A stretch of DNA of 64,000 bases. Source: Styela clava. Taxonomy: Eukaryota. Where the stretch lies: positions 21,266,001 through 21,330,000 of the forward strand of contig NC_135256.1 of assembly GCF_964204865.1 (NCBI RefSeq). The letters run 5' to 3'. The notes beneath the pieces are model-generated. The model was not told where the DNA came from. It did not search any database and worked only from the letters and a program-made list of their open reading frames with translations. Shown one piece after another: positions 4,887 through 61,002 of the stretch; the first letter of the stretch is position 1, and each line of letters begins with the position of its first letter. The translations under genes were made by a program, and so were the position numbers.

Positions 4887-5712
4887 CTTCCAACTATTTT
4901 TTGTCTTTTTTATTCAATTCCACTTTCATGAACTTTCTCATATTAAAGAGTTTATGCACTTCGTACTTCCGTTTTCAAAAACGAGCATTCAGAGTAAGCA
5001 AATGCGGAAGGGAAATAAGTATAGCAGATAGTTAACAGATTTCCGCAGTTTGATATTTTTCAATCCAATAAAAACAATACGTTGCAATAGTGCAAGTTGA
5101 CCGTAATTTCTTGTTATATGTTATGAAAGCCCCAAATCACAGTTTTTGTTTTGTACTGGCATACAATTTGAATTGTTCCATCAATCTATCCCGGGTGGAC
5201 ACAGAGGTGAATAGCTTTTTGAACTGGTAACAGGACAGATGTTACTGTTTCCGATAGTCTCCTTTCTTGCACCGAAATGCAGTTAGGTTAGGTATGCATA
5301 TATAATTCTAACAGTAATCAGAATAATGGTTGAATGAACAAAATCTCGACTATTCATCTGGCTGACAGATGTTGATTGTTTCGAAAATGTGAGACTGTTG
5401 ATCTTGTTAGAGTGGCTACGGACTATTCGCAGAATGGTCAGTGTTGTGAAATATATCAGACATCTACTACTAAATGTGAGTTCTTTCCTTTGATAAGTTT
5501 CGAACTTATATTTTAGGGTTTGAGCTGATTACAATCCCCGTAGAGTCGCTTCTGATTCTGGTCATTGAAAAGAAACCTCATTCATAATGATAGGTTCTCT
5601 TGATACATTTACAGGTCTAGGAAATTATAAGATCTATATTTTGCATAGTGAATGTTATCGCATACCGGTCAGCGCCCTGGCAGGTACTTGCGGGATACAC
5701 GTCGCGAGTAAT

Positions 5713-51119: not shown

Positions 51120-52950
51120 TCAGTTTACATCATTAATTGCTCCGCAACCACCATCTTCTATGCGATTAGTAGTTTTCCTGTTATGTTGTTCTTCCTCGCT
51201 CTGCTCTTTCGCATTTTGCTGACTTTGCAATTTATGCAATTTGTTGGCATTTTGAGACTTGCCCATTGTCCGCGCTGCAGTGCGATCCTCATGTGGTCGA
51301 ACAGCGTTTATTCTATGTTTTATACAATAAACTATGGTTCCCACGACGTAGATTAGCATAGATGTCACGAATACCAAGAAGGCAATAACCAGTGGATCAC
51401 TGTTGAAAAATTTATTTATTAAATATTTTTCGGGATAATTATTATTAACTTGAATAAAAGGATCTTCTGTAGAAATCATCCGCGACCAATACAAATTTGA
51501 ATGTCCAGCGCAATCTGTATTCCGTGCCCTAACTATAACTAAATAATAACTAATTTTTTACTTTGAGCGATGGCGGGGGTGGTTTTTTTCGGGTTGCTTT
51601 CTACAAAGGAAGCGAACATAAATAAAACAAATATCAGCTTCATGAAATTTAAACCGGTTATATTCCGAAACGATCCTTTAAAAATCGAATTGAATGTCGA
51701 GGCCTCTAAATCCGGCCCTGACCACCAGTTTGAAGATGTATGTGCCAGATACCTTGTATTAGAATGTATTACATACCTGAATCGATTTCTACTTTCTGTA
51801 TCTTTTGGCTCTTCTGAAATGCTCGTAGACTCTGAGAAGGAAAATCTTGTTGAAACTTAACAAAGAATTTTAACTGCTATATATTTATTTGTACGTGTGT
51901 AGGTATAAATTTCGTCGGTTATCTGTCTCATCTTCGCCAGGTTTAAATTCCAAGTAAAAATATTGTTATTATATATATAATTTTAATGATATACAATTGA
52001 ACATCTATTAAAACGTTTGCAGCGAAGTAAATAGGTTCAATTTGGATCAAGAAAATCTTGTCACTGTGAGAATCTAAATCATCATTCTCATTCACTTTTC
52101 AACATAGAGTATTCAGTTTGTTACGGAGTGGATATCACAGTTATGAAAATTACATTCATTAATATTTTCCAATCTCGAACTTGGAATATCGTGGCCAGTG
52201 GTCAATAGCACAAATATATATATATATATATATATTCTCATGTTACAGGAACGGAGTAGGCTTCGTCTTTTTATAACTATAAAGCAGAATAAAAATACTG
52301 AACCTGTGATCGGAGTTGTTCCCATTGGTGAGACAGTTGTATACCCGCAAATAGAATTTATTTCGTCCGATTGGTCCTCACAGCTGACAATGTCGTTGCA
52401 GAGATTTTTCTCTTTAAAACAGTAAGATCTATCTCTGCAAGCGTATTGCCTAAAATAATTAAAAACGGAAGTGTGTTTTATAAGTAGAAAATCGTTTTTG
52501 TCCAATAATGTCATATTTTAATAAAAATTAATACGCACTGTGGCGGGCAACCTCTGTCACTTATTATTGGCGTCCACCCGTACAAATTTTCATCAATGTT
52601 ATTGAAGTCCACTGATCCTTCTTCTCGTTTGCTAGCTCGACTGTTCTGCCGCTTGACACGATTCAATGATAAGCCTTGAATAACACGAAATGAGAGTGTA
52701 TTTACATGCAAACAGTATAGTAATTACGATTTAATATACACTCATCTACGAGAGTTAGCTATTCAGACTACATTACTAAAAACACGATTAAGAGCACTAA
52801 CCATATCTAATATACAACATAAGTACTTATTTGTTATAAGTACTAAATTGATAAATATATATTACCTGAAGTAACGAGCATCAAATCCGAGATAACAAAA
52901 TACAAAAGCGTAAACGCTATAAATGTTGTTGTCTTTGCTTCTTGACTCAT
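51120..52950 (-). CDS. Type I membrane protein with one LDL-receptor class A module, 5 exons: 52950-52866, 52674-52539, 52449-52304, 51855-51777, 51528-51120; ~284 aa
   Basis: Signal peptide (MSQEAKTTTFIAFTLLYFVISDLMLVTSG), RVKR, six-Cys LDLa module CPPQQYACRDRSYCFKEKNLCNDIVSCEDQSDEINSIC with acidic SDE motif, Ser/Thr stalk, TM (PLVIAFLVFVTSMLIYVVGTIVYCI) and polar tail. Phases 1,2,1,2 are all compatible; 855 nt. Confidence 0.85.
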
Positions 52951-55702
52951 CGTAGTGAAGATGCAATACGTTGTTTTAAATAAGATCCAGCTGTATTGAA
53001 ATTACTGTTTTGCTACTCCGTATTTACACAAGTTCTTTTGGTGCTTTGTGTTTGGATTGAGTGTTTATCAGACTTGGATAAGAATTTAACTCTTAAGTGA
53101 AACGAATAAACAATCAAGAGCAATTAGACATTCGTTCGAATTTTTGTTTACTCGACTATTATGTACAATACCGGTCATTATGACAAGAAGATTTCAGCTA
53201 AAGGATTTGGTACATAAAATTTCAAAATACTTCCTTTACGAATATTTTTTCAAACTTTTCATGAATTTGACAAAATCTGTATTATCACACATACCTTCAA
53301 GATTGTTACTTTAGCGACGCTGGTGATAGTGATTAAAAGGTATTTCATGTAGGTGTACAAAACCAAAAATTATAAGCACTTCCATGGTATGATTTTTGAG
53401 TAATGCTTTCCGTGATTTAATAATATTTCATTCTAGCTCCGTATGTAACTTCATATTGAACACTACCCTAACAGATAAGAAAACACTTCTGTTGATTGAA
53501 ATGACATTCCTTAATTTTTTTATTGAAGTTAAGTATACTAAATGCATATTTGCTGGGTGATTTGTTTTTTTATTGTTATTACAATTTCATTTTTAGCTAC
53601 CTTGATGTGTACAAACCTTAATGTTGTAAATGTTTCAACTCAAGGGTAATTGACTCGTCATTTTTCTCGTTCGCGTGTGAATCAAAGTTAATATTTCTCT
53701 ATTAAAATTGTCCACCCAAAGTAGAATTTAAACCTGAAATCAGCCACAAAGTGACATGCAATACGATCATTGGTATAGCCTCAAATATTTCCAGTGCATC
53801 TATTCTAACACGTTGATGACTTGATATAATTTTATTTGTTCGCTCAATTCAAACGTATGCACAAAGCCGAGTAATATGCAATAACAAAACTAACTATCCC
53901 AGACAAAAATGTTTTGTTATGGTGATAAGTTGGCGCTTTTGTAATATAATCTACAAAAATCAATCCATATGATTGACAAATATTCGAATACATTAATTGA
54001 AATTGATCGCCAATTTTCTGCACCAAATCGGTAGCAGTAGACAGGGACAAAAACAATGCGTAACATTTGTTATAAACATTCTATCTATTGCATACGTGAA
54101 TATACTAAAATGCTATTCCTGAGCGACAAGGCTTTGGTATTTATGGATAAATACTATCGAATCTAAATCAAATTGCTTATCTATTATCGAAACGCAAATA
54201 TTTATAACTCGTATAAAAACATTAATAGTCTCATCTCGATTATTCATATCGTTCATTTTAAACACTAACATGTGTGACATTTCGATTTCTTATTTTAAGC
54301 GCGCGGGAAAAAAGTCATATTTATTTTTATAATAAAAGCAGAAACATTTATTTCTTTATTGAGATAAAAAAAACTAAGTGAAAAAGAAGGTAGATCAACA
54401 ATTTGCGGTGGACTACCATTCATCTTCCAATGTTTTTCTAATTTATCAAAAATATTCATAAAGATAATACACTTGTGATTTATGAGAAAACAGTATGGAG
54501 TGAATAAACCCTCATTGTTGAAAACGGAAGCGGTTTCCACTTGACTAACGATTTCTATTCCTTCTGAAGTGCCATAGTAAGCAAGGAGAACAATGCTACC
54601 TGGGTGTAATCTTATTATTTGTATATTATATTATTTATATATTAGTTTTTATACGGCAAATGTACAATATTCTTGGAGTGCCATTATTATACTTCGATTG
54701 GGACAAGTTGTGGCTAGACCGGTTTTACTGACCCCATTCATTATTCAAGTAGGTTTATTATTGCGAATATTATTTTTGTTATTTTTCGCGTTGGAGGAGT
54801 TTGAAAATTTTAAATGGAAAAATCTCCTCTTAACGATGAGTAATTGTCGTGAAAAGTCTTCACGCTTTTCAGACAATTAGATAACTAACAAGCCGTGAAA
54901 TAAATCCTTTTGAATACCCTCAAATTAAGACGTTGTCGACACAATGTGTAAATAACGTCAACGACGATATTCTTAATTTTGAAGTATCTGAGAAAAACGG
55001 AGAAATTTATTTCCGATAATCTTTGTGACGTACGATCAATCGTAAAGGTTCTACCAGCAGTTTGCGAATCACCTTACATTAGATAAGTTGGATAGTGACT
55101 GTATCTTGAATTGAATTGAGTTTTGATTTGCGATTTCTTCTGAAAATGCCTTTTCACAAAACCATTTTATGGATAGAACATTTCGCTCATATCGAAACGT
55201 ATCCACGGTAATAACAATTTTCTTGAGATTATTTCCCTCATGGTAATTGCAATGTATAATCAATAATATTAATTAAATTTTTTGGAAGTATCATAATGGA
55301 TCGTTATCCACGATTCCGCGCATGAGGACGCACGGAGTGCATATTCCAAGCAGATAACCGTATTAGTTTGCACATATATACTAAATATACTATCATTGAA
55401 TCGTATACATATGAGTAAATTAACAGAAAAGATATATTGAAAAAATGAAAGCTGTATGCATTATAGTTTCAACTACAAAAAAGATACATTATTTGATTCA
55501 TTTTTTGATATGGATTAGATTTCCTTAATTTGGCTGAATTCAGAAGCGGTATCCGACATATAAGCCATCATGACTTCTTGCAACATAGCACAATTCAAGT
55601 GATGTTGAAAGACAAAAATTTTTAAAGTTTATTTCAATATTTTTACGTTATTGCGGGATTCGTCAATGTCAAGCTGGATTTATTGATCGAGTACGTTAGA
55701 GT

Positions 55703-57467
55703 TCAACTCATATATCCGTAGTTTCCATATTTCGATAAGAAACCGACTGGAGCGGCGATGAAAGATATGATGCAAGCTGCCCATGCCATCCATAGTGAGT
55801 AACCAAACTCTTCGCCAACTAATAAATTTTCTCTCGTCTTTGCTGTGTATACGGAACATCCAACCAGAAAGAATACACCTTAAATATGAAAAATGCATTA
55901 TTACAGCATTATGTTGGCTATTTAAAAAGATCTTTCAATTTTAGGGAGAGGGGGGGGGGGGATAGAAAAACCTCGTTTTTGTTCACATTACGTCAACATC
56001 AGCAAGCGTTGCTTCTGTCTTGTCGCGTCAGTGGCCGATTTATACCTTTAGGTTGAATCTTTCCAAGTTTAGCTTTGGGTTTTATAACCTTGCAAAAAAA
56101 TACACTTACAAAAAAAAAATGCCGAAAAACTTACATGATAAAAGTAATACGATTCCAAGGACAACATGTCCTTTCTTTTTCATTTTACCCAAAGCATGAA
56201 TGAGAGACAAAAAGACTCCAAAGACGATTCCAACAACGCCAAGAATTACAAACGCTCTTGTTGCGTTTATGTAGTCCGGAACTGGAAAAAATATATACAA
56301 TTCGATAAATAAAGTAATAAGAGGTCAAATTTTTCAGATCTATATCTTAAAATACACGTTATTATCATACCGTCTGTCATACTCGTTTAGTTCATTTTAG
56401 CAATCAAATATGGACGTTTTTAATCTTGTATGAAAAACTAGACGGAAATTTCGCATCATATAGTTGCATAGCCAATTTACCACAATTTCGGAGAATAAAA
56501 CACATTAATTTTAGTTGCATATATAAATTTGTGTTATATTTCTGCATATTGTAGAATTTTACATCTTTCACATTAAACTCCGCTTTTTTCTAGCTGGAAA
56601 TGATTTTGTACTTTAGTTTGAATATCAATGGTTTTCTAACTGATTCTGGTGACAATAAAGCGTTTTAGAGCACAAAAATCGTGAACCATAACGATTTGTA
56701 AATAGAACATCGCGTGTTCTTGAGCGTGCATATATGCAAAGACGCTGCATGTTTTTATTCCAATAACAACTAAGGTCACTGATGCTATTCATTGCTTGAA
56801 ACAGAAGATACATAAATGGGTGATGCGGATAAATAGGAGAAATGGGTAAGTTGGATACATGGCATTCTGCATGAGAATGGCTGTAATAACTACTGCAATA
56901 TAATCTGATTTCAAGCCGTGAAGCACACGACATCAAGTGAATCCAATATGCAATGGGAAATGTATTATACAGTCTGGTGTTTCAGTGAACCGACGTCAAT
57001 TAAAATTGTACCGATAGCAAAATAGTATAGTATAACAAAAATATACTGCAATTTTAGTCTGGAGTTGTTTTACCCTTCTACAACGTCAAAAGCGCCTTAT
57101 ACTTCTATATCGCACACGCACATCCGTCTACAACATTAATCAATTGTTTCTGTTTTGATACAATTATTCAATAATACCTAATGCAATTTTTTTTAGAGAT
57201 ATGCAGGGTGTCTCGAAAGTAGGTTGTTAACCCTTTCACCATCATTATATGTCAGAATAGAAACTTGCCATTCGTGTATAGCTGACAATCTTCTTTACTT
57301 GATCGAATTTTGCAACTTTCAAAGATACCGTACTCTGTACCGGCAGACATTGAAAGTTTCCATGACGGGGTTGCTAGAGAAATAGCGCTTAGAAGTGTTG
57401 CAGCGACGCATAGTAGGAACGTTATACATTGTAATAAGTGATAACTCTCAAAGTCCACAGCGAACAT
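55703..57467 (-). CDS. PMP22/EMP/LIM2/claudin-superfamily tetraspan protein, isoform a (exons 57467-57269, 56281-56135, 55878-55703), ~173 aa
   Basis: TM1 + SLATPSW...YGIFESC..C (claudin-family W-GLW-C-C-like loop); YINATRAFVILG (TM2); TM3 ..GCSVYT; FGYSLWMAW (TM4). First intron has a GC donor (G|gcaagt), phase 1. Confidence 0.85.
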
Positions 57468-58500
57468 TTTGACAGGTAAAATATGACTCAATCTACATTC
57501 TCACACCCTCTACGATAATTTCCGCATGCCTGAACAATGAACAGGAATCTGAATAAGTGGTAAACAATTTTCTTGCAAGATGCTTTTCTCGGTGATCAAT
57601 CAACCATTCCAGAAGGAAGGCATGTTAATTTGACTTAGAGGACTTGTTAATCTCTGGCGCCATAGTGCGAAATCAAATGTGAGGGTGTTGTTTAATTTTC
57701 CTGATCGTATTTAACGGACTCTCTCATTGCAGTATTACGTATGCGTAGGTAATGGTTAATTAAGTTGGAAAGTCAATATGACAAGGAAGACATCAAACAA
57801 ATAATTAAAAAATAAAAATCTTGAGAAGCAGAGAGTCATGTTACGGTTCAGTGATGCAATGTCTTTGTTGTCGGAAGGTTATCAATGATTATCAAAGCTT
57901 TAAGCGTATTCAATTTAATTGCTTTCAGCAGTGTGATGTCCAAGTTAGTAGATGATTAAAGTGTTATATCTTTGTAAATTTTATCCGTACCATTCAAACT
58001 ATAGTAGTTCTTTACCTAGACCTGGCTGCGTATACAATGCCCTTTCCAGAGCAAAAGACGTACAAATACGTCATATAAAAATCAGTTTTGAAGCTATGTT
58101 GAGTGCAGTAGCTCTCTCTAATGGCGGCTTAAAATGCAAATCCTATACAATGAGTAATTCTGATAATACTAGGGATTTGAGGTGTTGTTCCAAACAGTGC
58201 TATAACAAAACAGTAACTCTTGAACTTTGATACCTGTTTACCTTTTGGACTTAATTTTCTCAATAAATATATTAATAATAATAATTAATATCAAATGAAA
58301 AACTTGCCTTCTGATCGACTCGCGCAAGTTGTTACACTAAGCACTGTGATGCATCCCCGGAACAGTCCTAACTCTGTTCCAGAAGATGATAAAATAATAG
58401 TTCTACGCCAGGCGACCGTAATGGTTGCTGTGATGGATAAAACAGCAGCTGCACAAGCTAGAATTCCTGCCGCCAGTGCCAGAATTGCAAATGTCTTCAT
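55703..58500 (-). CDS. Same tetraspan gene, isoform b with alternative first coding exon 58500-58308 spliced to the shared exons 56281-56135 and 55878-55703, ~171 aa
   Basis: MKTFAILALAAGILACAAAVLSITATITVAW...GTELGLFRGC......TC = TM1+ECL1. Ends AAG|gcaagt (GC donor) in phase 1, the same phase as exon 1a. TATA-like tatata on the minus strand at ~58678-58683. Confidence 0.75.
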
Positions 58501-61002
58501 GCTTGCGGTGATCAAATAGAGGTAGAAGATTAGTCAGCTGATATGTTACAAGAAAGAAATCATTTAAATGCAAGAATAGTTGCTGGTTAGTAATGTCGTG
58601 AAACGTAAAATTAGAGGTGCTTATAAAGTTTGATGGCATATACAATCGTTTAATTGCTTCAGTCAAGAATCGGCTCATATATAAAAATATAAAATTCGAT
58701 AAAACTCCTCGTTATGTTAAATTAGGAGAATAAAAAATTTCAAACAAACGTAATTTAGTTGATGTAAAATGTAATAAATTTCTCTTGTAAAAAAACAACA
58801 ATAGAAGCTGAATTCTGATTAATTTCCTTTTTATTGAGGTATCACATACATACTAGCAAACATGCAAAAGATAATAAATACAAAGATTCTGACTTCATCA
58901 GCATCAGTGACGTAATCAGCATCCTATATAATTTGTAAATATCAATCCAGAATAAGCTATTGGAATTCCATAAATAAAACTTAAATTCATGCGGTCAAAT
59001 ATATTTAGATATCTTGCAACTATAACTCTCATATTCCACAAATAAATATTTATACTAGTTATGTACAGTTTGGCCGAAGCATTCGAACGAATATCGCAAT
59101 GCAACGCAACTTTATAGTGAAGAAAAAACATAGTTATGTTCAAACGACGACACTTCAAAAATTGTCCTGGAATAGATGAGAGAAAAAACTAAATACAATA
59201 AAAAATATCCATGAGTGCTCCAAATTGCAACATCTGAATATTATTTTTAAAATAAACATAAAGCACTCCGCCAAGTTAAAATTACCGAATTTAAATCTAG
59301 CGGGGCCATTGGCAGGAATTTCGAAAAGGGTCTCTAGAAAGACCTCCCAATTTGTCAATATCTTAAGAAAAGCATACACATAACAGAATAGAACATAGTT
59401 TTACTGTTGACTAAAACCTTCCTGATTTGTCTCAATATGGTCACATCAATTCTGTCACTGTTATGCCATGCAATTTCAAGATTTTCTGTCATTTTGACTT
59501 AACTGAGCTTTTGTATCGTTCTATTTTATACACTCAACCAATTCTCTTTGAGAAGCAGTCGCCAACTGTATATTATAAATACCTAATTCTAATCAATACC
59601 GGTATGATGTATTTCACATGACTTGAACATTTTGTGAAATGAAGTTAGTAATATTTTAAGCGCTTATGAATTTCTCGTTGTCTTAACAATCAACGCTATC
59701 CGTGTTACGCCGTAAAATACTCGAGTGAATATTGTGATAAAAATTTTGAAGAACTTTAGAAGACATCAATTTGTATACAATAACGAAGGCGCAATATATC
59801 ACACATTTGAGTGCTCAAACAGAATTTACTCATTTTAACTCCTCAGATATCTTTCTATGCCTATTAGATTAGCATTTGAGTTAACATTTCCCTCAACATT
59901 TGGTTAGTTTCGGGTCGCTGGAAATGAATTAAAGACTTATTTTTTGTTTTATTATGTTCACCACACAGAAAATTAACTGACTCAATTTCTTTAATAATAT
60001 CTGGTCTTCCAATAAAAGCATAAAGAATATAGCTATCTTTTCATCATCTCTTACGGCTCACCGAACACAACCAATAGAGTCATACCCTATAATTGTTTCT
60101 GCCTGAGCATTTAGAGGTAAATTATCTGAGATAGCCAATGATGCGCATCATCCCTCTTTTATGTCTTTGTAGACCATGTCATCGCAGTAATTCTAAGCAT
60201 CTAAATGTAGTCCTAACAACTGAAAAAATAAACGCTTTCATGATTCATTTGCGTAACCGCAGTCTTCATGCTTTTGGATAAATTGGATATCAGAAGCAAC
60301 GCCACGTATTGTTCGGATTGCCTTATAAAATCACACATATATATCGATGAAAAGCTTACCACGTTATGCATTCTTATCCGATCTACATCGTCAATTGGTC
60401 TTGTGATATCTTAGTCAGATATCTAAATCATGTGACGAGAAAAATGTCTTTTGCCAGCAAAAATTAGTCAGATGCGCAATGCACACACACTATTGATCAG
60501 ACACGGGCGAGGTATACAAGCGAATGCGCATTTCAGCTGTGTTGCAAAAAATTGTTGACGTCTTTAATTCGTGGTAAAAACAACTCCCAGTATCGCTTTG
60601 CATAACGCTTTTTGACCCTACACCAGTGCTGTATGCTTTTTAGTGATTTAACGTCGCCTAGCCATCTCGCGAATTCCATATTTTTGAACAAGATGGCTTC
60701 ATGCTGCCAAACCGAAGGTTTCATTCCCAATTGTTGTGGGACATAATGACAACGAATATGATATTTCTGGGGAGTATATATAAATAATACATAAATACCA
60801 AAATATATTGTACAGGTAATAGTCTCATTACCGGAAACTTAGTCATTGCGGGTATTCAATTAATTGCACTCTCACCAAGTTTCTAAGTGATTTCGGTTTC
60901 GATTCATCCGCTCTTACCCCAAAGCGACCGACGACTTATCGATCTTTTTTTAGTTTCTAATACACCGATATTAAAACGTTTAATACATTTAAAACAGGTA
61001 TC

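What the first reader, a model, noticed from the sequence alone, without database searches (positions are those of the whole stretch)
55703..58700. Tetraspan junction-type gene with duplicated 'variable' first exons (TM1+ECL1), both spliced through GC donors to shared constant exons
Seen: two paralogous exons (57467-57269 and 58500-58308) each carry an ATG, TM1 and the whole first extracellular loop (shared W...GTE.G.F..C...C). Each ends in phase 1 at a non-canonical G|GCAAGT donor. Only one set of downstream exons (TM2-TM4) is present. Splicing 1b into 1a via the two nearby AGs gives a stop or a frameshift, so serial inclusion looks excluded. The two loops differ sharply: charged ESCKIRSSKEDC versus uncharged RGCITVLSVTTC. 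Known: in claudin/PMP22-family proteins ECL1 governs trans-adhesion and paracellular charge selectivity; variable-first-exon/constant-region layouts occur in clustered protocadherins and UGT1A; GC-AG introns are rare and enriched at alternatively spliced sites. Inference: promoter choice swaps the recognition loop of one protein, giving a miniature variable/constant system. Retention of the GC donor in both strongly diverged exons suggests selection.
Basis: partly seen in the sequence, partly recalled or inferred. Interest (0 to 1): 0.8.

Follow-up and report, generated by a model that had tools for sequence, protein, structure and literature searches.

The report
Claudin-like gene with two first exons
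A sea-squirt membrane-protein gene of the claudin/PMP22 family makes two proteins that differ only in their first membrane helix and outer loop, by joining either of two first exons to the same later exons, much as vertebrate claudin-10 and claudin-18 do.

Summary
On the minus strand lies a three-exon gene of the PMP22/EMP/MP20/claudin superfamily. It has two diverged coding first exons, 1b (58500-58308) and 1a (57467-57269), and both end in phase 1 at G|GCAAGT. Assembled contigs of public runs join 1a to exon 2 in 3 of 4 runs, with a loose end in the fourth. They join 1b to exon 2 in one full contig, with loose ends in two more runs. Both joints have GC..AG ends. A lariat-like back-joint starts exactly at the 1b GC donor. 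Both products are already in NCBI's annotation of Styela clava, as LOC120328377 isoforms X1 (1a, 173 aa) and X2 (1b, 171 aa). Exons 2 and 3 are unique in the genome. Synonymous sites between 1a and 1b are saturated, yet the donor 9-mer is the longest identical run. Three of four paralogues use GT at that intron. Separate promoters, a junction function and selection on the GC donors remain inferred. The layout matches vertebrate CLDN10a/b and CLDN18.1/18.2, so this is a new member of a known kind.

The parts
58308..58500 (-). Alternative first exon 1b, coding part: Met1 to the first base of codon 65 (TM1 and most of ECL1; W31, G45-L-F47, C50, C59)
   Evidence: Translation. Identical to residues 1-64 of P0001, NCBI isoform X2. 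Joined to exon 2 in the X9 contig and in loose ends of X2 and X6.
58501..58580 (-). Minimum 5' leader of exon 1b. The true start probably lies between 58580 and about 58640. A TATAA motif sits at 58625-58621.
   Evidence: X9 record 22 runs to 58580. The X6 depth bin 58643-58839 is near zero. The motif was read. The start site is inferred.
58302..58307 (-). GC donor of exon 1b (GCAAGT), first bases of a 2,026-nt intron that contains exon 1a
   Evidence: Joint 56281>58308 with ends GC..AG on the gene strand. Back-joint 58307>56310 begins exactly at this G.
57269..57467 (-). Alternative first exon 1a, coding part: Met1 to the first base of codon 67 (TM1 and most of ECL1; W36, G47-I-F49, C52, C61)
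   Evidence: Translation. Identical to residues 1-66 of P0005, NCBI isoform X1. Joint to exon 2 in X1, X2 and X6, and a loose end in X9.
57468..57680 (-). Probable 5' leader of exon 1a, with five short upstream ORFs. A TAAATA motif sits at 57713-57708.
   Evidence: X6 record 18 covers 57269-57680 at depth 59.9. The next contig, 57695-57998, has depth 4.43. Motif and uORFs were read. The start site is inferred.
57263..57268 (-). GC donor of exon 1a (GCAAGT), start of a 987-nt intron
   Evidence: Joint 56281>57269 with ends GC..AG in 3 of 4 runs.
56282..56310 (-). Shared 3' splice region: T-rich tract, CAG acceptor (AG at 56283-56282), and a likely branch site near 56310
   Evidence: Both joints land at 56281. 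The back-joint in X9 lands at 56310.
56135..56281 (-). Constant exon 2: end of ECL1 with an N-A-T sequon, TM2, intracellular loop, start of TM3
   Evidence: Translation. Unique in the genome. Present in P0001 and P0005.
55879..56134 (-). Intron 2, canonical GT-AG, 256 nt
   Evidence: Joint 55876>56133 (cut +2) in 4 of 4 runs.
55703..55878 (-). Constant exon 3, coding part: rest of TM3, ECL2, TM4, short tail ending ...GYMS, stop TGA at 55705-55703
   Evidence: Translation. PF00822 hit for this exon alone at E 3.3e-5. 100% match to P0001 residues 115-171.
54379..55702 (-). 3' UTR, minimum extent. X1 and X2 contigs continue to about 53871-53875.
   Evidence: Records 1, 8 and 22 run 1029, 1025 and 521 letters beyond 54900. 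The end is not defined by contigs.

Best explanation
This is LOC120328377 of the ascidian Styela clava, a three-exon gene for a 171-173-aa four-helix membrane protein of the PMP22/EMP/MP20/claudin superfamily.

It has two alternative coding first exons, each with its own start codon. Exon 1a or exon 1b is joined through a non-canonical GC-AG intron to the same exon 2. The two proteins share TM2-TM4, ECL2 and the tail. They differ in the N-terminus, TM1 and about 34 residues of the first extracellular loop.

Shown here:
- Both splice joints.
- The GC register of both donors.
- The common acceptor.
- The uniqueness of the constant exons in the genome.
- The claudin fold of both products.

Inferred:
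- Each first exon has its own transcription start, and the cap-proximal donor is used.
- The swap changes what the outer face of the protein binds or lets pass, as in claudin-10a/10b.
- The duplication is old and both copies are kept by selection.
For: Splicing (runs X1, X2, X6, X9 from 3 studies):
- Intron 2 joint in 4 of 4 runs.
- 1a>2 joint (GC..AG) as contig joints in 3 of 4 runs, plus an 11-letter loose end in X9.
- 1b>2 joint (GC..AG) in X9 inside one 1,911-letter contig running 3'UTR-exon 3-exon 2-exon 1b.
- Matching loose ends on both sides of the 1b>2 joint in X2 and X6.
- A back-joint 58307>56310 in X9, as expected of a lariat from the 1b donor.

Public proteins:
- P0001 (171 aa) equals 1b+2+3 and P0005 (173 aa) equals 1a+2+3.
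- NCBI names them isoforms X2 and X1 of LOC120328377 [Styela clava], XP_039250776.1 and XP_039250775.1.

Family:
- PF00822 scores 56.9 bits (P0001) and 63.6 bits (P0005) against a cut-off of 26.7.
- The AF2 models have pTM 0.64 and 0.69.
- They match claudin-3, claudin-4, claudin-19, claudin-15 and MP20 at TM-score 0.72-0.80.

Both first exons look functional:
- All 6 invariant columns of the first-exon part of an 8-sequence alignment (T, W, G, G, F, C) are kept in both.
- pN 0.555 is below pS 0.80.
- The two polymorphisms listed inside 1a and 1b (57324, 58435) are synonymous by my reading.

Single set of constant exons.

Separate starts: contig edges and depth steps in X6 and X9, with TATA-like motifs about 30 nt upstream.
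Against: - The runs are labelled only 'RNA? (a guess)' and are assembled contigs. They cannot show starts, strand or abundance.
- The 1a>2 joints have short sides (19-29 letters).
- 1b>2 was not seen in X1.
- In X1 and X2, contigs run unspliced from 57269 through the interval and exon 1b to 58957 and 58330. Low-depth contigs reach about 60314 in all four runs. Some transcripts may therefore start upstream and use the 1a donor. That would make the choice one of donor site, not only of promoter.
- An X2 contig carries a 7-letter insertion 8 nt before the end of exon 1b. It would shift the 1b frame. It lies 15 letters from the contig end and is seen in one run.
- The 1b loop is modelled with low confidence (pLDDT under 50 at residues 30-42 and 51-57).
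- No functional or localisation data exist.
- The protein lacks the long tail and the C-terminal YV of classical claudins.
Confidence: 0.82

Rival explanations
1. There is one upstream promoter and a choice of donor. All transcripts start at or upstream of exon 1b. Use of the 1b donor gives isoform X2. Skipping it and using the 1a donor gives a long-leader mRNA in which the 1b frame is a 74-codon upstream ORF and 1a is the main ORF. The two weak GC donors compete for one acceptor.
For: Unspliced contigs run 57269-58957 (X1) and 57269-58330 plus 58316-59107 (X2), alongside 1a>2 joints in the same runs. Low-depth contigs reach about 60314 in 4 of 4 runs. Both donors are the same weak type.
Against: In X6 the 1a contig stops at 57680 at depth 59.9, and the next contig upstream has depth 4.43. 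The 1b region is high again (contig depth 70.3 at 58435) and near zero above 58643. The intron between 1a and exon 2 is also covered by contigs in X1 and X2 (records 2 and 9), so the interval contigs may be plain pre-mRNA. My back-calculation from contig means leaves the interval near intron level in X1. The tool warns that contig depth cannot rank parts of a gene.
Confidence: 0.2
2. Exon 1b is a decaying or non-functional duplicate that is still transcribed and spliced. Only isoform 1a matters.
For: - 1b is further from the outgroup N-termini than 1a: 23.9-32.3 bits against 5 of 6 relatives and no hit to P0006, versus 33.9-39.3 bits against 6 of 6 for 1a.
- The 1b loop has lower model confidence (versus 55).
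- There is a possible frameshifting 7-letter insertion allele in X2.
- 1b>2 was not seen in X1.
Against: The frame is open with an ATG. All 6 family-invariant first-exon residues are kept, including the first loop cysteine, and the second loop cysteine is kept too, despite saturated synonymous divergence. The splice to exon 2 is in frame in a full-length contig, with signs in 3 of 4 runs. The listed polymorphism at 58435 is synonymous.
Confidence: 0.1
3. The protein is not a cell-junction protein. It could be a PMP22/EMP/MP20-type or TARP/LHFPL-type partner of other membrane proteins, so the swapped loop would tune a cis partner rather than trans-adhesion or paracellular selectivity.
For: - Size is 171-173 aa with a tail of about 10 residues and no YV end.
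- The best PDB sequence match is LIM2/MP20 at E 9.7e-6, just ahead of claudin-3 at 2.1e-5.
- The fold search gives TARPs and GARLH4 at TM-scores equal to those of claudins.
- NCBI names the Ciona relative 'lens fiber membrane intrinsic protein'.
Against: NCBI names isoform X1 'claudin-4-like' and UniProt names the Ciona savignyi relative 'Claudin'. The Ciona relatives end in YV. MP20 itself is called a lens fibre membrane junction protein, which I recall and did not check. Nothing here discriminates between the options.
Confidence: 0.35

Closest known systems
Vertebrate CLDN10 (claudin-10a / claudin-10b)
   Same: One gene has two alternative first coding exons (1a, 1b), so the isoforms differ in TM1 and the first extracellular loop and share the rest. 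In CLDN10 the swap turns an anion channel into a cation channel (passages of PMC5521874).
   Different: Orthology is not shown. The Styela protein is shorter, lacks the claudin tail, and has G-[LI]-F instead of GLW. Its donors are GC. No function has been measured. The annotated Ciona relative shows only an N-terminal extension, not a second loop. The duplication is therefore probably independent.
Vertebrate CLDN18 (CLDN18.1 lung / CLDN18.2 stomach)
   Same: Alternative first exon with separate promoters in a claudin gene (passages of PMC10036590).
   Different: The CLDN18 isoforms are described there as highly homologous. Here the two first exons share only 17 of 61 aligned residues.
PMP22 exons 1A / 1B
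   Same: Same superfamily, with two alternative first exons driven by two promoters (passages of PMC2714311).
   Different: The PMP22 first exons are untranslated, so the protein does not change. Here both are coding.
Clustered protocadherins and UGT1A (variable first exons, constant exons)
   Same: Layout of variable first exons, each with its own ATG, spliced to shared downstream exons. An internal variable exon lacks a usable acceptor.
   Different: There are only two variable exons. Stochastic or combinatorial choice is not shown, and promoters were not mapped.
LIM2 / MP20 and claudin-3/-4 solved structures
   Same: Four-helix bundle with a beta-sheet first loop. TM-scores 0.73-0.80. Best sequence matches in the PDB.
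   Different: 19-24% identity over the alignment. The subfamily cannot be assigned.

Membership tests
PMP22/EMP/MP20/Claudin superfamily (Pfam PF00822) | Profile match above Pfam's gathering score over the whole four-helix domain | tested here: met
   P0001 scores 56.9 bits and P0005 63.6 bits against a cut-off of 26.7, covering profile positions 5-157 of 161. Exon 3 alone scores 24.3 bits, below the cut-off.
PMP22/EMP/MP20/Claudin superfamily (Pfam PF00822) | Four transmembrane helices with a beta-sheet first extracellular loop | tested here: met
   AF2 models give H3-27, strands 41-58, H67-94, H102-132, H140-163 for the 1b isoform and the equivalent for 1a. Foldseek matches claudin-3/4/15/19 and MP20 at TM 0.72-0.80. 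Loop confidence is low in the 1b model.
Classical claudins | ECL1 signature W-GLW-C-C (wording of the motif from PMC5521874) | tested here: inconclusive
   W, G-[L/I]-F and two cysteines (C-x8-C) are present in both first exons. The second W is replaced by F in all 8 aligned relatives.
Classical claudins | Cytoplasmic tail ending in a PDZ-binding YV (feature recalled, not taken from a call) | tested here: not met
   The Styela protein ends ...NYGYMS with about 10 residues after TM4. The Ciona relatives end in DYV, EYV and AYV.
Classical claudins | Forms tight-junction strands or a paracellular barrier or pore | not testable with these tools
   Needs expression and freeze-fracture or electrophysiology.
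CLDN10/CLDN18-type isoform switch | Two alternative first coding exons that encode TM1 and ECL1 and splice to common exons | tested here: met
   Joints 56281>57269 and 56281>58308. Products P0005 and P0001.
CLDN10/CLDN18-type isoform switch | Separate promoters with tissue-specific use | tested here: inconclusive
   Contig edges at 57680 and at 58580 or beyond, with depth steps in X6 and X9, against read-through contigs in X1 and X2. Run metadata are coded, so tissues are unknown.
Variable/constant first-exon clusters (protocadherin, UGT1A) | An array of many variable first exons | tested here: not met
   Only two first-exon copies lie in the window and at this locus. Four paralogue loci of 10 kb each have one N-terminal exon each.
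GC-AG (U2-type) introns | GC at intron positions +1 and +2 with otherwise consensus donor, an AG acceptor, and use shown by transcripts | tested here: met
   Both donors read G|GCAAGT and the acceptor reads CAG|. Joint ends are GC..AG on the gene strand, and the lariat-like back-joint starts at 58307.

The most novel reading that the evidence does not exclude
Swapping of TM1 and ECL1 arose independently in a tunicate PMP22/MP20-like gene and in vertebrate claudin-10 and claudin-18. In the tunicate, the paired weak GC donors are themselves selected. Keeping both first-exon donors equally weak would let transcription start (cap proximity) or a regulated factor decide which one reaches the single acceptor. 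It would stop the acceptor-proximal 1a donor from always winning in transcripts that begin at 1b.
Probability: 0.25. Interest if true: 0.55.

Novelty: new member of a known kind. Interest (0 to 1): 0.35.

Why it matters
If the two isoforms differ in adhesion or permeability, a non-vertebrate chordate would use the same device as vertebrate claudin-10 and claudin-18: one gene with two outer loops. The case would be easy to test, because the gene is small, has two clean exons and comes from a culturable ascidian. It would show whether loop-swapping is a recurrent solution in this fold. The twin GC donors, kept across saturated divergence while paralogues use GT, offer a compact natural test of whether weak donors are maintained for regulated first-exon choice. 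As it stands, the gene structure is ordinary biology. NCBI's automatic annotation already captures it.

Tried and rejected
- Exon-by-exon Pfam search was weak. Only exon 3 came near the cut-off, so family placement waited for the full-length database proteins.
- A third first exon was sought with tblastn in the window. The best extra hit, 48432-48301 at E 0.49, was read and rejected: it has no W/G-L-F/C motif.
- Relics of a second set of exons 2 and 3 between 1b and 1a: none.
- The alternative GT four bases after each GC was rejected. It gives phase 2, runs into a stop in exon 2 (my reading), and is contradicted by the contigs.
- Spliced-leader trans-splicing as the source of the 5' ends was rejected for now. 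No loose ends appear at the 5' contig edges, and no AG precedes 57680 or 58580. Contigs are poor evidence for this.
- The bacterial-type promoter and terminator scan is irrelevant for an animal gene and was disregarded.
- Cross-species genomic test of exon number, donor type and dN/dS could not be run.
- The third homologous-protein search, the protein-atlas search, the search for related loci and the VIA-align searches were not used.
- Paper search for 'claudin-18' with 'alternative promoter' and 'exon 1' gave 0 papers. Reworded.
- Searches for print on this gene:
  - 'Styela clava' with 'claudin' found 6 papers, none on this gene by title or abstract start.
  - 'ascidian' with 'claudin' and 'first exon' found 1 paper, on medaka pmp22.
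- Supplementary files were not opened.
- Earlier scan notes: one unrelated note on this window and nothing by words.

Papers and what I saw of each:
- PMC5521874, PMC10036590, PMC11178514, PMC2714311, PMC11203038: passages found with 'find' only.
- PMC2490688: start of the abstract in the search listing only.
- Van Itallie 2006 and Gunzel 2009: seen only in the reference list of PMC5521874.
- Gould 2005: seen only in the reference list of PMC2714311.
- The enhanced consensus of GC donors and the cap-proximal donor rule are recalled, not read.

Full report
**What is in the sequence.** The window is AT-rich animal DNA.
- On the minus strand between 58500 and 55703 lie four coding pieces.
- Exon 1b runs from the ATG at 58500 to 58308. 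Exon 1a runs from the ATG at 57467 to 57269. Exon 2 is 56281-56135. Exon 3 is 55878-55703 and ends in TGA.
- Both first exons end in phase 1 and are followed by GCAAGT.
- Exon 2 follows a T-rich tract and CAG, and ends in phase 1 before GTAAGT. Exon 3 follows AG.
- Each first exon encodes a hydrophobic helix and a loop with W, G-T-E, G-[L/I]-F and two cysteines eight residues apart.
- The stretch between the cysteines is KIRSSKED in 1a and ITVLSVTT in 1b.
- From the W to the exon end, 1a has 4 basic and 4 acidic residues. 1b has 4 basic and 2 acidic residues.

**Is the resemblance more than chance, and is there only one constant part?**
- BLASTP of the two exon peptides gives 15 of 50 identities, E 4e-7.
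- tblastn of each exon peptide against the window finds the other first exon (E 5.9e-4 and 0.024) and nothing else credible. The next hit was read and rejected.
- In the whole 376.8-Mb assembly, exon 2 has one match. Exon 3 has itself and one weak paralogue on another contig.
- Exon 1b matches only itself and 1a.
- Exon 1a also hits weak paralogues on four other contigs.
- So 1b has no downstream exons of its own.

**Transcript evidence.** One search found 15 runs, 13 of which hold the stretch, from 4 studies. All have coded names and are kept as assembled contigs, with the kind given only as a guess. I laid four of them (X1, X2, X6, X9; three studies) on 54900-60800.
- *Intron 2.* The joint is present in 4 of 4 runs, so these libraries contain spliced RNA.
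- *Joint 56281>57269.* Its ends read GC..AG on the gene strand. It is a contig joint in 3 of 4 runs, with the shorter side 19-29 letters. In X9 an 11-letter loose end at 57269 reads the start of exon 2.
- *Joint 56281>58308.* Its ends also read GC..AG. It is a contig joint in 1 of 4 runs (X9), with 149 letters on the shorter side. It lies inside one 1,911-letter contig that runs 3' UTR, exon 3, exon 2, exon 1b up to 58580.
- *Loose ends for 1b>2.* In X2 and X6, loose ends on both sides read the end of exon 1b at exon 2 and the start of exon 2 at 58308.
- *Run X1.* X1 shows no sign of the 1b>2 joint.
- *Serial inclusion.* No joint from 58308 into the neighbourhood of exon 1a was seen in any run.
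- *Lariat-like back-joint.* X9 has a low-depth back-joint from 58307, the first intron base after exon 1b, to 56310, 28 nt before the acceptor, with four odd letters between. This is the form expected from reverse transcription across a lariat branch, and it fixes the GC register independently.
- *Caveats.* 30 further pieces and 67 further differences were not shown. Contigs cannot show ends, strand or level.

- Exon 3 was searched against the 1.84-billion-protein library. It found 4 proteins at E up to 0.001, the best being 171 aa and 100% identical.
- That record, P0001, reads exon 1b, exon 2, exon 3 with the junction codons predicted from the GC donor.
- A search with P0001 returned a second record, P0005 (173 aa), which reads exon 1a, exon 2, exon 3.
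- NCBI names them 'uncharacterized protein LOC120328377 isoform X2' and 'claudin-4-like isoform X1' of Styela clava, XP_039250776.1 and XP_039250775.1.
- The organism is therefore the ascidian Styela clava, and the two-isoform structure is already in its automatic annotation.
- I found no paper on it. 'Styela clava' with 'claudin' found 6 papers, none about this gene by title or abstract start. 'ascidian' with 'claudin' and 'first exon' found 1 paper, on medaka pmp22.

**Family.**
- Full-length P0001 and P0005 pass Pfam PF00822 (PMP-22/EMP/MP20/Claudin) at 56.9 and 63.6 bits against a cut-off of 26.7. P0005 also passes Claudin_2.
- The best PDB sequence matches to P0005 are LIM2/MP20 (E 9.7e-6), claudin-3 (2.1e-5) and claudin-4 (about 1e-3).
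- AlphaFold2 models were built on an 8-sequence alignment. They give mean pLDDT 69.5 and pTM 0.64 for 1b, and 74.2 and 0.69 for 1a. Each has four helices and a beta-stranded first loop.
- Foldseek matches them to claudin-3, -4, -9, -15 and -19, MP20, TARPs and GARLH4 at TM-scores of about 0.7-0.8.
- The protein is short. It has a tail of about ten residues ending YMS, and F where classical claudins have the second W.
- It belongs to the superfamily. I cannot place it among classical claudins rather than the PMP22/EMP/MP20 group.

**Relatives and age of the duplication.** A profile search found 8 proteins:
- the two Styela isoforms;
- Ciona intestinalis 'lens fiber membrane intrinsic protein';
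- Ciona savignyi 'Claudin';
- four unnamed marine sequences.

Further points on the duplication:
- The older Ciona 'isoform X1' differs only by a 12-residue N-terminal extension, not by another loop.
- Exon 1a is closer to all six outgroup N-termini (33.9-39.3 bits) than 1b is. 1b scores 23.9-32.3 bits against five of them and has no hit to P0006.
- Between 1a and 1b, 17 of 61 aligned residues are identical. Nucleotide identity is 38% and third-position identity 28%.
- pS is 0.80, which is saturated, and pN is 0.555.
- All six columns that are invariant in the first-exon part of the 8-sequence alignment are kept in both exons.
- The duplication is therefore old, and both copies look constrained.
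- I cannot tell whether it predates the Ciona-Styela split or is lineage-specific with a fast-evolving 1b.

**The GC donors.**
- In a 318-column DNA alignment of the two exons with flanks, the longest identical run is the 9-mer GGCAAGTTT across the donor. The next longest runs are 7 and 5.
- At the homologous phase-1 intron, three of four paralogues in this genome have plain GT donors (CAAG|GTACGT, ATTG|GTAAGT, GAAA|GTAAGC). The fourth could not be resolved.
- None of the four paralogue loci (10 kb each) has a second N-terminal exon.
- The simplest reading is this. The ancestral first exon already had GC, and both copies have kept it through saturating divergence, although a single C-to-T change would give the usual donor.
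- That pattern fits selection but does not prove it.

**How the choice is made.**
- In X6 the high-depth 1a contig ends at 57680, and the adjoining upstream contig is about 13 times shallower.
- The 1b region is high again and close to zero above 58643. X9's full-length 1b contig ends at 58580.
- TATA-like motifs lie about 30 nt upstream of these edges: TAAATA at 57713-57708 and TATAA at 58625-58621 (read).
- This fits two starts, with the cap-proximal donor used.
- Against a purely promoter-based choice, X1 and X2 have contigs that run unspliced from 57269 through the interval and exon 1b. Low-depth contigs reach about 60314 in all four runs.
- These may be nascent RNA, because the 1a-exon 2 intron is covered too. 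They may instead be long-leader transcripts that use the 1a donor.
- Contig depth is one figure per contig, so I do not rank them.

**Comparison with what is known.** The same device is established inside this superfamily.
- CLDN10 encodes two isoforms that differ in the first helix and first extracellular loop through exons 1a and 1b. One is anion-selective and the other cation-selective (PMC5521874 passages).
- CLDN18.1 and 18.2 arise from an alternative first exon with separate promoters (PMC10036590 passages).
- PMP22 has two alternative but untranslated first exons (PMC2714311 passages).
- The Styela gene is a further case, probably independent, with the added feature of twin GC donors.
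- It is not a protocadherin-like array.

**Verdict.** Novelty is modest, because the isoforms are already annotated and the design is known from CLDN10 and CLDN18. The open points are the start sites, tissue use, function of the two loops, and whether the GC donors are selected.

Noticed in passing
window 58315 (exon 1b, 8 nt before its end): The X2 unspliced contig (record 10) has 7 extra letters here that would shift the 1b reading frame. They lie 15 letters from the contig end and appear in one run only. This may be a segregating null allele of isoform 1b or an assembly artefact.
   Followed up: no
window 58640-60314: Low-depth contigs cover the region upstream of exon 1b in all four runs and stop before 60416. 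This could be an upstream start, nascent RNA or a separate RNA; it is unexplained.
   Followed up: no
window 58307 to 56310: A back-joint in X9 links the first intron base after exon 1b to a point 28 nt before the exon 2 acceptor, with four odd letters between. It looks like a lariat read and suggests a branch site near 56310.
   Followed up: partly
window 58172; 57993-58029; 58106: All four runs carry 8 extra letters behind 58172 relative to the window. X2 also has a 10-letter insertion at 58106 and long loose ends (205 and 255 letters) at 57993 and 58029. These are indel or structural variation in the 1b-1a interval.
   Followed up: no
window 57468-57680 and 58501-58580: The presumed 1a leader holds five short upstream ORFs. 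The presumed 1b leader holds one. I read these.
   Followed up: no
window 56176 (exon 2): Run X1 has T>C on the plus strand, which by my reading turns a Lys codon of the intracellular loop into Arg. The listed variants inside 1a (57324) and 1b (58435) are synonymous.
   Followed up: partly
window 53871-54900: The mRNA contigs of X1 and X2 run about 1,025-1,029 letters beyond 54900, giving a 3' UTR of about 1.8 kb. An AATAAA lies at 53836-53831, just beyond the contig ends.
   Followed up: partly
window 51120-52514, minus strand: ORFs here carry an LDL-receptor class A-like cysteine/acidic motif (52113-52514) and a single hydrophobic segment (51120-51494). This is a separate downstream gene and was not analysed.
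   Followed up: no
L014 (G000:C2:10981600-10991599), about 5087-5200: The first exon of this claudin-like paralogue has no obvious GT or GC donor at the expected phase-1 position. Its open frame runs on through a Cys-rich stretch.
   Followed up: no
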